Source of the DNA: Bispira polyomma
Lineage: Eukaryota
Direction of reading: 5' to 3'
DNA: 64,000 nucleotides
Assembly: GCA_965649765.1 (NCBI GenBank)
Contig: OZ287749.1
Span: forward strand, 21,886,001 to 21,950,000
Below, piece after piece: positions 41,871 through 51,799 of this stretch; position 1 is the stretch's first letter, and every line of letters begins with the position of its first letter. The notes under the pieces were generated by a model that saw only the letters and a program-made list of their open reading frames with translations, searched no databases and had not been told where the DNA came from. The position numbers and the translations under genes were made by a program.

Positions 41871-41975
41871 TAGCAGTCACTGCAGGCACGGCATGACCCT
41901 TCAGTCGAGGGCACAATAAAACACCTTTACTCCCTAGCTAGCTATGCTGAGCACAATATCACACGTTTACATCAG
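41871..41975 (+). repeat. Repeat A1, 5' part (equals 51546-51650)
   Basis: 105-bp direct match with one mismatch. Confidence 0.95.
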
Positions 41976-42399
41976 CCTCTCACCCAGGAGGGGCTGGCAG
42001 GCCCAATTTGCCCGGCCAGCCAAAAGAAAATTGACCATACAAAGCAAACAAGTTTGTTACACATTTGGGTTGTTTATTCATACATAAAACACATGTTAGT
42101 AACTACTACCTCTCAAGTTGAGGTTACCTTAATAATGCACCTGCTAAATATGATTACTCCTTAATCCTCCCACTTTAAGGTGGCGTTGACCTCAGCATGT
42201 TCTTTTACATGTCACACTTAAGGTTGCCTAAAGCTGGGTTAAGGTATTGTTAAAGTGATAGCACCCTTGCATGTTGTTAGTTAAGGTGACCTTTCCCCTG
42301 AAGGGCCTCTACAGTCTATTTGTTATGCTAAACCTAGTTTATTTACACTACTATATAATTTGATATAATGTATGATATAACTTGCCAAACCCAATGTAA

Positions 42400-43401
42400 T
42401 TATTTGTAGGTGTGTGCTGTGGTTAAGTGAGTGTGGAAGGCAGCTGCTACTAGTCCCGCTGTTTTGGGGGTTTTTACCAAGTAACGCCAGATGGCATCTG
42501 AACGCCAACCGCCATGTACCTTAATATGTTGGAGGTCAACGTGGTGGTCGAAAGCCCATGAAGCAGCCGACCTTCTAAGAGCATGGAAGCCATATTCAGC
42601 TGGGATGAGGCCTATTTGCTGCACTAAGGCAGAGAAAACTTTACGTACGTGGAAGGCCGTAACCACGACGTGTGTACCTGACTGTGTGTATTGAAAAAGA
42701 GGGGTTTTGTTTGAACAGGGGCTGGGGGGGCAAATATTACGCAGGGCCTGTACTGGGCATAAAGGGGAACCTGGAAGGTTAGGGACCTGGACTACCTGCG
42801 CTTACCCTGACACCTGCATGTTCTTTGCACACTTAGTTATTATGTGAGCCCCGGGCGCCCCCCAAACTACGTCCCGTGGTGTGGGAAACCTTGAGGGGTG
42901 ATAAAGAGTCGCTTTAGATAAAACCAAGGTTGCAAGTCTAAAGAACCCAAAGAACCCTAACAGTATGATGGCTTTGTGTACCTTAGCCCCTGGAAACTTG
43001 GATACCAGGGATATTATCTGGATAAGTTTGTCTACAGAAAGAACTCCTTTTACTTTATATCTGAGGGGTGCATTATGAGACACCACCTTGATCATGAGAT
43101 GCACTTTCCTATGCTTTAGCACCTGCAAGGGGAAGTCGTACATCTGGAAGAAGTGGTTAAGTACAGCTAAGTAGCCTTGTAGTGTCTGTGATCTGAGTCC
43201 CTGCTGGGCCAAGAACTCGAGGAATAGTAAGACTGGATTAAGGTCGTGGGGGACCTGGATTTTAAGGTGAGACAAAAAGGCTATGTACAGCCTGAATTTA
43301 GATTGGTAAGCCGAGGAGGTCCGGGGCCTGAAACCCGTAGAGATGCGTGAGTGGACATCTTGCAGCAACCGTCTGGAAAGGCTGTTACCTACAAGAATCA
43401 A
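42400..43401 (-). pseudogene. Tyrosine recombinase of the nested element with one in-frame TAA (42802-42804)
   Basis: ORFs 42802-43401 and 42400-42666 share a frame; FFGFFRLATL, KCAKNMQ, LCPV, HALRRSAA, HGGWRSDAIWRY (catalytic set otherwise intact). Confidence 0.9.
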
Positions 43402-45389
43402 ATGTCACAATTAGGTTTTGACCATTGAATGTCCACCGGGCACCAATTACATGTCTTCAGGTAAAGGACCTCGGCCTTGTTTGTGCTGTAAAAATGTTGC
43501 CAGCGTGACAATATATCTGCATACGTATTGTTACTTCCCCGAACGTGCTCCACTGAGATGTTTATATTAAACTTGGCCTGAATTAACCATAATGTCCTGG
43601 CACAAGCATTCAGAAAGACATCTTTACCTTTAGACTTATTAAGTATATGGACCACAGCCATATTGTCGCAATGGACACAAACGCTTGTATCCCTCCAACA
43701 ATCACCCCATAGTCTGAAGGCAATCAATATGTTACACATCTCGAAATGCACAATACCTAGGTGTTGTTTATACTCTTGGGGAATATCCACACTATATATT
43801 TGCCCTTCCCAATATGCCCCTAAACTTTGCGGTGAAGCATCTACAAATAATTGTTTTCTAGGGGAGTTCATTTGGTGAATGGCTGTAACCCCATTGTATT
43901 CTTGTAAAAATACACAAAACCAATTAAGGTCTTTGTGAAATGAATCATTTAAGGGGACCTTAGTATGAGGGGGAGTGCCTCTTAACACCCCCAAAATCCT
44001 GTTAACGAACAGCCTGGCAGGCTTAACACAACGGTGTATGTAGATCAATTTGCCCAGCAATTGTTGTAACTGTCTGCGTGTAGCCCAGGACTTGTGAGTC
44101 CATTGTTTACATAATTGGCTGATTTCGCTAAGTTTATTCGCTGGTATCGTCAGGACCCCTGTGCGTGCATTCACATTTATCCCCAAACATGTAACACTTT
44201 CTGAGGGGGAATCTACCTTTTCATAATTAATTGGGAGGCCTAATTCTGTGATTAAATTCTTGAGGGAGTTAAACCCAGCACTAGCCTTTCTGGGAGGCGC
44301 AACGCCCAAGAAATCGTCTAAATACGCGCACGTCCAGTGATCAAGTTGACGCAACAAGTGAGTGACGCAGTCTGACGTCATCTGACACGCGCTGGCGCCC
44401 GAGGAGAGCCCGAAGGACACACTTACGTCCACATAGTAATCACCCTCCCAACTTATCCCCAAGGCCCCATAGTCATATGGATCACTCCTCAAATTACGAT
44501 ATGCTCGTTTAAGGTCGATTTTATATATAAGGGCTGTAGGGCCTATCAAGGCTATCTGGTCCACTAAATCATCTATAGTTGGATAGGACAATTTAAACTC
44601 GACCTCATCAAACACGTCCTTGGGAATGCAACTGTTTACACTTTTGCCTTTAGGCCATGAGAGATCCACTATAATGCGTCTATTCCCGTCGGGCTTGGGG
44701 CGAGACATCAAAGGGGATACATGTAATTTTGGAAATGGGCTGTCCGCCAAAGGACCTACAATAGCCTTAAACTGGATTTCAGTGCTAAGATACTTGGCTA
44801 CATGCTGGGGGTAATTAGAAGCTGAGGCATGATTCACTGTAGTTTTACTATATTGAAACTGGTCATAATCCAGGGAAAGGGGGAAGCCATATTGCAAGTA
44901 TTCACAAACCACATTATAGTCGTAATCCTTAAGGTAGGAACGCCAAGCCTTTATGTTCAATTGGGAGGGGACAGATACTCTGGCCCCCCTATAGTTAGGG
45001 CATTGTTCTACTTGGGCGAGGGCATGAGCTTGTTTAACCCAACTAACCATGTCAGTGTCACTCAACTCCCGGGCTTCAGTCCTGTGCGCTAAATACTGCA
45101 CAGGCCAACTTGGAACAAAGCCCCTCAGCCACTTACCCAACGTTTCTCCCGAGCTAATTGTGACCCCACAGTCTTTCATTGAACGATCCAATTGTGAGGG
45201 GCTTATACCTTCAGTACACCTTAATTGGGTAACACTCGTGCCAAACTGCCCTTGCAATATAGCTGAGCTAATATTAACTGATTCTTGGAACAATTCAACG
45301 GTAGCAACACTTGAACTTCCCCCTAACTGGTCTTGTGACCAAGTACAATCACTATCGTCTGTCAGTAGGCCGAGCCGGCTCGGCAGCAT
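43398..45389 (-). CDS. Reverse transcriptase-RNase H of the nested element, open 663-aa ORF
   Basis: SPLMSRPKP, RRIIVDLSWP, YKIDLKRAYR, VSFG, AYLDD, CLGI; RNase H FVDAS, HFEMC, CDNMAVV, ADILSR. Confidence 0.93.
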   Translation of the reverse strand: MLPSRLGLLTDDSDCTWSQDQLGGSSSVATVELFQESVNISSAILQGQFGTSVTQLRCTEGISPSQLDRSMKDCGVTISSGETLGKWLRGFVPSWPVQYLAHRTEARELSDTDMVSWVKQAHALAQVEQCPNYRGARVSVPSQLNIKAWRSYLKDYDYNVVCEYLQYGFPLSLDYDQFQYSKTTVNHASASNYPQHVAKYLSTEIQFKAIVGPLADSPFPKLHVSPLMSRPKPDGNRRIIVDLSWPKGKSVNSCIPKDVFDEVEFKLSYPTIDDLVDQIALIGPTALIYKIDLKRAYRNLRSDPYDYGALGISWEGDYYVDVSVSFGLSSGASACQMTSDCVTHLLRQLDHWTCAYLDDFLGVAPPRKASAGFNSLKNLITELGLPINYEKVDSPSESVTCLGINVNARTGVLTIPANKLSEISQLCKQWTHKSWATRRQLQQLLGKLIYIHRCVKPARLFVNRILGVLRGTPPHTKVPLNDSFHKDLNWFCVFLQEYNGVTAIHQMNSPRKQLFVDASPQSLGAYWEGQIYSVDIPQEYKQHLGIVHFEMCNILIAFRLWGDCWRDTSVCVHCDNMAVVHILNKSKGKDVFLNACARTLWLIQAKFNINISVEHVRGSNNTYADILSRWQHFYSTNKAEVLYLKTCNWCPVDIQWSKPNCDI

Positions 45390-45831
45390 TTCGGCAGATG
45401 GGGGTCCTATGTTTCGGCGAGCTGTGAGCCGACGGCATCGGCTCCAGCGACAAGGCGGAATCTCTCACCCACTCCTGAGCATCTAGCCTCTCTTCAATTT
45501 CAGTGAACCTGTCCATCATCCTATCCAGCTTCGTCAGGAGGTCCACGCTTGCCGCCTTCCGTTTAGCGCGTTTCTTGGGGGCCTTACCTCTCACGTCTGC
45601 TTGGGATTGAGACTCGTCCACCGTCGCTAGTGATACTTCTGCAGTTGCTGGCCTCTGTGTAGAAATGGAAGGAAGTCCCGGAGTCTGCGCCTGTTCGCCT
45701 TCTGATGATGAGGAGCGATCCATAGCTCTCTTCTTTCTACATAAATTACCCAGTGGAGGGTTGTGCACAGAACGACAAGCTGAACACCGCTCCTTGCGTT
45801 TACTCCTGGTGTTATAAGATTCAGGTGGCAT
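45352..45831 (-). CDS. Short, probably internally deleted Gag-like ORF1 of the nested element (~159 aa from MPPESY)
   Basis: CSACRSVHNPPLGNLC is homologous to the host gag CSRCNIIHPRPVGNRC; basic patch and coiled coil follow; the KSGR/CCCH C-terminal half is absent. Confidence 0.7.
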   Translation of the reverse strand: MPPESYNTRSKRKERCSACRSVHNPPLGNLCRKKRAMDRSSSSEGEQAQTPGLPSISTQRPATAEVSLATVDESQSQADVRGKAPKKRAKRKAASVDLLTKLDRMMDRFTEIEERLDAQEWVRDSALSLEPMPSAHSSPKHRTPICRNAAEPARPTDRR

Positions 45832-46161
45832 TTCCAGACAATGATCACCCACTACTATCACATATGACACACATACACCACTTTGCACAACTACACACAT
45901 AACAAAATAAAATGACTAAAACGTTAAAAGTAGTAAATGTACTGTGTTTCTTAGTTTAAAATCCCCACAGAGCTTTTCATATGTTCTGTTCAAAAGCCTT
46001 TCCAAGAATGAGGGTTTTTGGACACTTGTGCACAAGCTTGGGCATTTTGGCGGGAAACCCAAGTTGTCACTTCAATTATGATTAATTGGTGAATGCTTTA
46101 CACTAGGTGAGAGGCTGAAATCTGACGCTGGCATTCCATAATGCACGCGTTCACTACACAG

Positions 46162-51545: not shown

Positions 51546-51799
51546 TAGCAGTCACTGCAGGCACGGCATGACCCTTCAGTCGAGGGCACAATAAAACACC
51601 TTTACTCCCTAGCTAGCTATGCTAAGCACAATATCACACGTTTACATCAGTCCACTTAACAAATGTTTATAAGTTAGGACCCAATCAGGCATGACCTGCA
51701 CAACCAATAAAAAATTATTTACCTCAAAGTTTTTCCCGCCTTTCCCATTGTGGGCTCACAAATTAGCTAGACACACAAGAGCTAGCATACAAAAAGTTA
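51546..51799 (+). repeat. Repeat A2 (intact)
   Basis: Contiguous copy of the two A1 halves, joined at a single CAG (51648-51650). Confidence 0.95.

What the first reader, a model, noticed from the sequence alone, without database searches (positions are those of the whole stretch)
41973..46161. Ngaro-clade YR retrotransposon with unusual termini: 5' fold-back, 5'-located complement of the 3' end, and a 3' hairpin, with no split direct repeats or long ITRs
Seen: both ends are defined to the base by the interrupted A1 repeat, so the termini are complete. On the element's sense (minus) strand the first 47 nt fold back (CTG/CAG, TGAACGC/GCGT-CA, GCATT/AATGC; plus-strand 46115-46161). The segment 46103-46117 is complementary to the last 15 nt of the element (41973-41987, 14/15). 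A GC-rich hairpin (ggctggc-a-ggc-ccaattt-gcc-cg-gccagcc, 41992-42021) lies just inside the 3' end. No A/B direct repeats are visible. Known: DIRS1 elements use long ITRs plus a 3'-located ICR; Ngaro and PAT elements use split direct repeats. Inference: ~46103-46135 is an imperfect complement of the circle junction, a miniature ICR at the 5' end that could splint both ends for priming or circularisation. That would be a third end architecture for YR retroelements; I cannot exclude that it is already catalogued.
Basis: partly seen in the sequence, partly recalled or inferred. Interest (0 to 1): 0.9.

Follow-up and report, generated by a model that had tools for sequence, protein, structure and literature searches.

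The report
Defective Ngaro retrotransposon copy, repeats lost
This is a broken, single-unit copy of an ordinary Ngaro-type jumping gene whose relatives in the same genome do carry the usual split direct repeats, so it is not a new end architecture, although its two ends form a conserved hairpin that may matter for how these elements circularise or insert.

Summary
The insertion is exact: an uninterrupted copy of the host repeat lies at window 51546-51799, and there is no target-site duplication. The last 15 nt are complementary (14/15) to 46103-46117.

In the same family (97% identity), copies continue past the same 3' end into A2 (first 189 nt), a 273-nt unique spacer "x" and B2 (last 413 nt). 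This holds for the C2 cluster, C5:51246002 and a fragment at C3:85066366, and for a sister family at 72% identity.

The predicted circle junction occurs verbatim as the genomic B1|A2 junction. About 80% of copies, including the window's, are unit-length A-internal-B.

The window copy is defective. It lacks about 1.37 kb and has an in-frame stop in the recombinase.

The 5' fold-back and the end complementarity are two halves of one ~75-nt imperfect hairpin spanning the B|A junction (z -4.8 to -6.0). It is conserved across families, with one compensatory pair. Its conserved 5x5 mismatch bubble argues against a DIRS-1-type copying template.

How the unit-length form arises is unresolved: template switching during reverse transcription, or later B1xB2 recombination.

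Other agents of this scan had already noted Ngaro split repeats and the structured A2-B2 spacer elsewhere in this genome.

The parts
41973..46158 (-). Whole element copy (4,186 nt), unit-length A-internal-B form. The CTG at 46159-46161 is target-derived or ambiguous.
   Evidence: Empty-site paralogue. The same first and last bases recur in about 25 other copies with unrelated flanks. A near-full copy on C5 is 5,558 nt.
45970..46158 (-). A region: the 189 nt that recur as A2 after B1 in split-repeat copies.
   Evidence: Query positions 1-192 are found again directly after position 4189 in L010-14, and partly (from q63) in L018 and diverged in L025; L052 also has it by alignment to the full C5 copy and the A-x-B query.
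46103..46117 (-). 15-nt arm complementary to the last 15 nt of the element (outer stem of the junction hairpin).
   Evidence: pair I5; 14/15, 0 of 20,000 shuffles. In sense RNA the single mismatch is a G-U pair. The arm is conserved in the 72% family with changed outer bases that still pair.
46123..46153 (-). Inner stem-loop of the junction hairpin (7-bp stem with a bulge, 2x2 loop, 5-bp stem, tetraloop). It is preceded by the 5-nt unpaired element start at 46154-46158.
   Evidence: Folds of natural B1|A2 junctions. The sequence is nearly invariant in all families, while the first 5 nt vary by family.
45352..45900 (-). ORF1 remnant (gag-like, 182 aa). It is cut short by a copy-specific internal deletion of about 1.37 kb at about 45358.
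   Evidence: Other copies have 1,373-1,411 extra nt here, and ORF1 is 418 aa in L029. No Pfam family matched.
43398..45389 (-). ORF2: reverse transcriptase plus RNase H-like domain. Its N-terminal part is lost to the deletion.
   Evidence: Pfam RVT_1 E 5.8e-9 (above the curated cut-off) and RVT_3 E 0.0013. Atlas neighbours are RVT_1 clusters, mostly from Cnidaria.
42400..43401 (-). ORF3: tyrosine recombinase, 333 codons, interrupted by one in-frame TAA at 42802-42804.
   Evidence: Translation. Pfam Phage_int_SAM_1 and Phage_integrase hits on the two halves, both below curated cut-offs. Other copies keep open frames of 328-334 aa.
41973..42385 (-). B region: the 413 nt after the recombinase stop that recur as B2 in split-repeat copies. 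AATAAA signals lie at 42343 and 42078.
41992..42021 (-). GC-rich 3' hairpin, 19 nt inside the 3' end.
   Evidence: Predicted (z only -0.68). A hairpin at the same position exists in all subfamilies, and one position changes G-U to U-A.
41973..41987 (-). 3'-terminal 15 nt, pairing partner of 46103-46117. The last 12 nt are invariant across families.
51546..51799 (.). Uninterrupted paralogue of the host repeat that the element split (the empty site).

Best explanation
What it is. Window 46158-41973 (minus strand) is a defective, unit-length (A-internal-B) copy of an Ngaro-like tyrosine-recombinase retrotransposon family. The canonical form of this family does have split direct repeats: A1-gag/RT-RH/YR-B1|A2-x-B2, where x is a conserved 273-nt unique spacer. 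The copy was inserted without a target-site duplication, exactly between the ...GAGGCTG end of B and the TGTAG... start of A. That is the point where B and A abut in the internal B1|A2 junction and in any circular or end-joined intermediate.

How the A2-x-B2 module was lost. Either reverse transcriptase switched template between the 413-nt B2 and B1 repeats while copying a split-repeat RNA, or B1 and B2 recombined after insertion. The first seems slightly more likely. Both routes are precise and leave the true ends intact.

The end features. I infer that it is the cis element that brings the two ends together and/or is recognised by the recombinase, and not a copying template.

Shown: the anatomy, the exact ends, the existence of split-repeat copies, the conservation of the hairpin, and the defects of this copy.
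Inferred: the route of loss and the role of the hairpin.
For: Exact insertion with no duplication.

Identical termini with unrelated flanks: 13 unit-length copies of the family (window, L002-9, L017, L019, L027, L028) and 2 of the 72% sister family (L024, L026).

Split-repeat copies of the same families: L010-14 (one locus duplicated five times), L018, the L052 fragment and L025.

The junction exists in the genome: GAGAGGCTG followed by TGTAGTGAACGCG occurs verbatim.

Genome-wide counts: 4 of 27 exact A starts, and 10 of 53 with one mismatch allowed, are preceded by the B end.

The module is inherent, not a chance tandem: 12 of 14 independent junctions have the x-core motif 342-389 nt downstream, and no junction was seen followed by the internal region. 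The x-core motif has 109 genomic hits against 0 in the control and is conserved between families. B1 and B2 differ only by private mutations, 0.7% in L010 and 3.2% in L025.

Junction hairpin: z -4.8/-5.7 as RNA and -5.3 to -6.0 as DNA in two families. Between families one outer pair changes U-A to C-G and another C-G to G-U.

Domains and defects.

Precedents in the literature: Ngaro copies lacking split repeats are common in Xenopus (PMC9210276). VIPER/SIRE has an A2-unique-B2 module, and only 7 of 15 copies have the repeats (PMC6681497). Solo AB repeats occur in Cafeteria (PMC8547959). Direct repeats of 110-700 bp are deleted precisely, at 41% to over 90% per retroviral replication cycle (PMC3187697).
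Against: - No RNA data exist for this organism in the runs on offer, so transcript ends and expression of either form are unknown.
- Unit-length copies outnumber split-repeat copies about 4-5 to 1 in every family sampled. The youngest copies (end branches 0.006-0.008) are already unit-length, while older split-repeat copies survive (0.012, 0.030). This sits less well with slow post-insertion loss, but the numbers are too small to reject it.
- One clade (L004-L007) carries an uncompensated mismatch in the core stem.
- Placement in the Ngaro clade rests on architecture, not on a tree with reference sequences.
Confidence: 0.8

Rival explanations
1. The unit-length A-internal-B form is itself the autonomous, replicating architecture. 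The 5' segment (46103-46135) acts as a miniature ICR that splints or regenerates both ends, so split direct repeats are not needed.
For: - Unit-length copies are the majority in all families sampled, and the youngest copies are unit-length.
- The end complementarity is far beyond chance and is conserved.
- No permuted form (junction followed by the internal region) was seen among 14 junctions. This argues that the real termini, and not just any B|A junction, define integration.
- DIRS-1 uses single-stranded linear cDNA and needs its ICR (PMC7192593).
Against: - Split-repeat copies exist in every family examined. Their unique spacer x is conserved across families and always follows the junction. 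This implies that the split-repeat form is transmitted and under selection.
- The complementarity is interrupted by a 5x5 bubble kept in all families. The first 5 nt of the element therefore cannot be copied from it, unlike the exact DIRS-1 ICR.
- An AATAAA 105 nt before the 3' end suggests that transcripts of a unit-length copy would lack the last ~85 nt, with no internal copy to restore them.
Confidence: 0.1
2. The split-repeat copies are only chance tandems: a unit-length autonomous element next to an independent non-autonomous A-x-B element (SIRE-like) that integrated at its 3' end.
For: - Solo A-x-B copies exist: C7:15780294 (L055), and three A starts followed by the x-core without a junction.
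- In L025, B2 is marginally closer to L024's B than to its own B1 (97.6% against 96.8%).
Against: - Unit-length circles should then land next to resident copies at least as often, giving junctions followed by the internal region. None was seen among 14 junctions, and 12 are followed by x.
- Solo A-x-B copies are no commoner than split-repeat copies.
- A2 and B2 match the family of the element they follow.
Confidence: 0.07
3. The end features (fold-back, 3' hairpin, 15-nt complement) are chance similarities without function in a decayed copy.
For: Taken alone, the 5' 60 nt and the 3' hairpin fold no better than shuffles (z +0.63 and -0.68).
Against: - The combined junction hairpin has z -4.8 to -6.0 in two families.
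- 0 of 20,000 shuffles reach the observed complementarity.
- The first ~55 nt and last 12 nt are nearly invariant in families whose neighbouring non-coding sequence has diverged beyond alignment.
Confidence: 0.03

Closest known systems
Ngaro-like retrotransposons (order DIRS; Goodwin & Poulter 2004, as summarised in PMC9210276, PMC4157794, PMC8547959)
   Same: - gag-like, RT/RNase H and tyrosine recombinase frames in that order on one strand.
- No methyltransferase domain.
- The family's full form has split direct repeats, with A1 at the 5' end and B1-A2-B2 downstream of the recombinase.
- Insertion without a target-site duplication.
- Many genomic copies lack the 3' repeats, as reported for Xenopus.
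   Different: - The window copy has only A and B once.
- A2 and B2 are separated by a conserved 273-nt unique spacer instead of abutting.
- The B|A junction lies inside a conserved ~75-nt imperfect hairpin, which I did not find described in the papers I could read.
- Clade membership by RT tree was not tested.
VIPER and its SIRE module in trypanosomes (PMC6681497)
   Same: - A1 ... B1-A2-B2 repeats.
- SIRE is the first ~185 bp of the element, an exclusive internal stretch and the last ~220 bp, which corresponds to A2-x-B2 here.
- Solo modules occur.
- Only about half of the copies carry the repeats.
   Different: - Kinetoplastid lineage.
- The exclusive stretch is ~30 bp there against 273 nt, conserved and apparently structured, here.
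- SIRE is abundant, whereas solo A-x-B copies here are rare.
DIRS-1 internal complementary region (Cappello 1985; PMC7192593, PMC3266345)
   Same: - An internal segment complementary to both extremities that could bring the ends of a single-stranded cDNA together.
- A 3' hairpin has been proposed there as a primer.
- Integration by recombinase without duplication.
   Different: - The DIRS-1 ICR is an exact 88-bp complement next to the right repeat, and the element has long inverted terminal repeats and a methyltransferase.
- Here the segment is at the 5' end and is about 35 nt, interrupted by a conserved 5x5 bubble and a 2x2 loop.
- There are no inverted terminal repeats and no methyltransferase.
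- The family also keeps a same-sense internal junction (B1|A2).
Direct-repeat deletion during reverse transcription, and solo-LTR-like recombination products (PMC3187697; solo AB repeats in Cafeteria, PMC8547959)
   Same: Precise loss of one repeat plus the intervening sequence. This gives A-internal-B from A-internal-B-A-x-B, and solo A-x-B by the A1/A2 route.
   Different: This has not been shown for any tyrosine-recombinase retroelement. Here it is an inference from copy structures only.

Membership tests
Ngaro-like (DIRS order) | Encodes a tyrosine recombinase | tested here: met
   Frame 43401-42400 has 333 codons with HxLR ... W ... Y motifs visible in the translation. Pfam Phage_int_SAM_1 (E 0.0013) and Phage_integrase (E 4e-5) match the two halves, both just under curated cut-offs. 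This copy has one in-frame stop; other copies are open for 328-334 aa.
Ngaro-like (DIRS order) | RT and RNase H upstream of the recombinase on the same strand | tested here: met
   RVT_1 at 36.4 bits (cut-off 29.6) and RVT_3 at E 0.0013 in ORF 45389-43398. The same holds in L002.
Ngaro-like (DIRS order) | No methyltransferase domain | tested here: met
   No methyltransferase family appears in any ORF of the window copy or of the fuller C5 copy. The RNase H match ends 33 residues before the ORF stop, and the recombinase frame starts at once.
Ngaro-like (DIRS order) | Split direct repeats: A1 at the 5' end; B1, A2, B2 downstream of the recombinase | tested here: inconclusive
   Not met in the window copy. 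Met in the same family at 97% identity (L010-14, L018) and in the 72% sister family (L025), with an extra 273-nt spacer between A2 and B2.
Ngaro-like (DIRS order) | RT/RH groups with Ngaro reference elements in a phylogeny | not tested
Atlas neighbours are unnamed RVT_1 clusters, mostly from Cnidaria.
Ngaro-like (DIRS order) | Insertion without a target-site duplication | tested here: met
   Empty site in the same window. There is no shared duplication in 12 other copies with both flanks known.
DIRS1-like | Long inverted terminal repeats | tested here: not met
   The only terminal inverted match is the 16-nt pair I5.
DIRS1-like | Exact internal complementary region near the 3' end, complementary to both termini | tested here: not met
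   The complement lies at the 5' end and is imperfect, with a conserved 5x5 bubble.
DIRS1-like / PAT-like | Methyltransferase domain after RNase H | tested here: not met

The most novel reading that the evidence does not exclude
The conserved junction hairpin is a working end-joining device common to this Ngaro lineage. In a linear single-stranded cDNA, the 3'-terminal 15 nt pair with positions 45-59 and the first ~40 nt fold on themselves. The two true ends are then held at a nick beside a 5-nt unpaired core, and the tyrosine recombinase acts on this folded single strand, as recombinases do on folded integron attC sites or CTX phage DNA. This would explain three observations: only the real termini are used for insertion and never the identical internal B1|A2 junction; the 5-nt core varies by family while the arms stay fixed; and unit-length copies are primary products.
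Probability: 0.2. Interest if true: 0.65.

Novelty: new member of a known kind. Interest (0 to 1): 0.33.

Why it matters
As first framed, a third end architecture for tyrosine-recombinase retroelements, the finding would have been important. That reading does not hold, because the family has ordinary split direct repeats and this copy has lost them.

Three modest but useful points remain for a poorly understood group whose replication has never been studied experimentally outside DIRS-1:
1. The two ends of these Ngaro elements are parts of one conserved hairpin across the junction.
2. The internal junction is always followed by a conserved spacer and is never used as an insertion end.
3. Four in five copies are unit-length forms.

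These points give concrete, testable handles: hairpin mutants, and junction-followed-by-internal reads as a circle-specific marker. They also warn annotators that repeat-less Ngaro copies with exact ends are not a separate class.

Tried and rejected
- **Fetching full copies.** A later pattern search could no longer cut loci either. More distant families were therefore studied only through motif counts.
- **Target duplication or microhomology.** None is consistent. Only the window (CTG) and L024 (TGTAT at both ends) show any, which is compatible with chance.
- **Paralogue-specific differences between B1 and B2, to type the single B of unit-length copies.** None exist; all differences are private mutations.
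- **Age test on a tree of 17 copies.** Split-repeat copies are not the youngest, but two data points cannot separate loss at replication from loss afterwards.
- **Rfam.** There is a weak twister-P3-like match in B (window 42141-42198; 21.5 bits against a threshold of 39.9; E 0.66) and a partial GIR1 match. Neither recurs in subfamilies 89-91% identical or in the 72% family, so I take both as chance. The junction hairpin of L025 gives only a meaningless microRNA-precursor match.
- **RNAalifold on the 3' ends.** I read the pairs by eye from the alignment.
- **Sequencing runs.** Three DNA runs of one study and no RNA were offered. I did not lay them, because genomic B1|A2 junctions make a circle-junction read undiagnostic.
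- **Two-junction circle with random choice of junction.** This predicts permuted copies (junction followed by the internal region). None was seen among 14 junctions.
- **Literature.** One search on Ngaro hairpins returned nothing relevant, and the original Ngaro paper is not held.
- **Not run.** I did not run the large protein-homology searches, since classification was not the point at issue.


Full report
**Conventions.** The element lies on the minus strand. I write q for positions on its sense strand, with q1 = window 46161 and q4189 = window 41973.

**The observation.**
- The flanks of the element, joined together, match an uninterrupted copy of the same host repeat at window 51546-51799 (98% over 254 nt).
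- The three-way alignment shows the empty site with a single CTG between the two flanks. The insertion is therefore exact and made no target-site duplication.
- The 16-nt inverted match between 41972-41987 and 46103-46118 is reported by the repeat finder. Within the element it is 14 of 15, and none of 20,000 shuffles of the first 200 nt reaches that.
- The GC-rich hairpin near the 3' end and the fold of the first ~45 nt are both predicted. Each alone is no more stable than shuffled sequence (z -0.68 and +0.63).
- No second copy of the terminal regions exists anywhere in the window.

**Other copies fix the ends.**
- A search of the window's own genome returned dozens of copies.
- Thirteen copies of the family, and two of a sister family only about 72% identical, end at the same ...GTGAGAGGCTG followed by mutually unrelated DNA.
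- About 25 copies begin with T(G/A)TA(G/T)TGAACGCG after unrelated DNA.
- The true 5' end is therefore window 46158.
- There is no recurring duplication or microhomology.

**This copy is defective.**
- All other long copies have 1,373-1,411 extra nt at q~804, window ~45358. A fuller copy on C5 measures 5,558 nt.
- The deletion removes the end of the gag-like ORF1, which is 418 aa in L029 against 182 aa here, and the start of ORF2.
- The recombinase frame has 333 codons with one in-frame TAA at 42802-42804.
- The domains are RVT_1, an RNase H-like RVT_3 match, and the N-terminal and catalytic parts of a phage-type integrase. No methyltransferase is present, and there is no room for one.

**The family does have split direct repeats.**
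- In five near-identical duplicates of one locus on C2 (L010-14), in L018, in a fragment at C3:85066366 (L052) and in L025 of the sister family, the same 3' end is followed directly by three segments: the first 189 nt of the element (A2), a 273-nt stretch found nowhere else in the element (x), and the last 413 nt (B2).
- This is the Ngaro arrangement A1 ... B1-A2-B2 (PMC9210276, PMC8547959) with an added spacer. It recalls the VIPER SIRE module, which also has an exclusive stretch between its A2 and B2 (PMC6681497).

**How common each form is.**
- With exact matching, 27 element starts of this group of families are found, and 4 are preceded by the B end.
- With one mismatch allowed the figures are 53 and 10, before collapsing duplicated loci.
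- About one element in five is the split-repeat form, and the rest are unit-length.
- Papers on Xenopus Ngaro and on VIPER report the same thing and treat it as degeneration (PMC9210276, PMC6681497).

**The split-repeat form is an inherent form, not a chance tandem.**
- Of 14 independent B|A junctions, 12 have a conserved motif of x 342-389 nt downstream. None was found followed by the internal region.
- The x motif occurs 109 times in the genome, against none for the reversed control. It aligns between families whose other non-coding DNA has diverged.
I confirmed only its conservation and position.
- B1 and B2 of one copy differ only by private mutations, so they were identical at insertion.

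**The end features are one hairpin.**
- Natural B1|A2 junctions fold into a single structure of about 75 nt. From outside to inside it has a 15-bp outer stem (end of B with q45-59), a 5x5 unpaired bubble whose 5' side is the first 5 nt of the element, a 7-bp stem with a bulge, a 2x2 loop, a 5-bp stem and a tetraloop.
- Its z-scores are -4.8 and -5.7 as RNA and -5.3 to -6.0 as DNA, on either strand, in both families.
- The core 12 bp and the inner stems are almost invariant.
- The outer three pairs differ between the two families yet still pair: U-A becomes C-G, C-G becomes G-U, and G-U becomes A-U.
- One clade (L004-L007) carries an uncompensated mismatch in the core.
- The first 5 nt differ between families (tgtag, tatag, tgtat, tgaat, taaat, taatt, tactt), while the flanking arms do not.
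- Because the bubble is kept unpaired everywhere, the 5' segment cannot be the template from which the ends are copied. This is the role of the exact 88-bp ICR of DIRS-1 (PMC7192593).
- The segment can still hold the two ends together or mark the recombinase site. That is my inference.

**How the unit-length form arises.** Two routes give the same precise product.
1. *Template switching during reverse transcription.* Reverse transcriptases delete direct repeats during copying at high rates. The reported figures are 41% per cycle for 110 bp and more for longer repeats, and the deletions are precise (PMC3187697). A 413-nt B repeat should therefore often be collapsed.
2. *Recombination after insertion.* B1 and B2 could recombine later, as in solo-LTR formation and as suggested for solo AB repeats in Cafeteria (PMC8547959).

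On a tree of 17 copies, the unit-length copies include the shortest end branches (0.006-0.008), and the two split-repeat copies have 0.012 and 0.030. Split-repeat copies are therefore not enriched among the young. This leans towards loss at replication but does not exclude slow loss.

An AATAAA 105 nt before the 3' end suggests that a transcript of a unit-length copy would lack its last ~85 nt and have no internal copy to restore them. Such copies would then be dead on arrival. No RNA data were on offer to test this.

**Rivals.**
It is weakened by the conserved, always-downstream x module and by the unpaired core.
- *A chance-tandem origin of the split-repeat copies.* This is disfavoured by the exclusive junction-then-x arrangement.
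- *Pure chance for the end features.* This is excluded by the statistics and the conservation.

**Verdict.** The finding is an ordinary, defective member of a known kind. Its description was accurate, and its claim of novelty is not supported. The conserved junction hairpin, and the contrast between the used termini and the unused internal junction, are the parts worth keeping.

Noticed in passing
L010:1038-1310 (minus strand); motif hits genome-wide, e.g. G000:C2:11117850-11117874: The 273-nt spacer x between A2 and B2 has a core with two short hairpins (AGCCT...AGGCT and AGCCTT...AAGGCT). It is conserved between families. Its 25-nt motif has 109 genomic hits against 0 for the control, usually about 1.3 kb downstream of a recombinase N-terminal match.
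   Followed up: partly
G000:C2:10.84-11.24 Mb (L010-L014): One split-repeat copy, with its own internal deletion, is present five times in both orientations with identical flanks. This is a segmental duplication cluster, not five insertions.
   Followed up: partly
window 42141-42198 (minus strand): Weak twister-P3 ribozyme-like match inside B (21.5 bits, threshold 39.9, E 0.66), lacking one stem. It is not found in the 89-91% subfamilies or the 72% family, so it is probably chance.
   Followed up: yes
L052:1452-2823 (G000:C3:85066366-85067737): A fragment made of only the last 47 nt of B, then A, x and B, the last interrupted by about 425 nt. The 47 nt begin almost exactly at the 5' base of the 3' hairpin, which might mark a stalled or truncated cDNA. 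Unexplained.
   Followed up: no
L024:4520-4540 and G000:C10:19529718: This unit-length copy of the sister family has the 5-nt core TGTAT both as its first 5 nt and directly after its 3' end. Here it is a single case among about 18 copies.
   Followed up: partly
whole genome G000: The recombinase N-terminal half gives about 9,100 first-look candidates. The 150 scored are all at 59-99% identity, and many have open frames of 328-334 aa. A pair 5.7 kb apart (C9:49426115 and C9:49431807) has the x motif only after the second copy. This genome has a very large and probably recent Ngaro expansion.
   Followed up: no
I did not identify the repeat.
   Followed up: no
window 43398-45389 (minus strand): In the language-model feature search, one group of neighbours of the RT/RNase H protein is hepadnavirus polymerase (score 0.95), beside unnamed eukaryotic RVT_1 clusters. 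It is a lead only.
   Followed up: no
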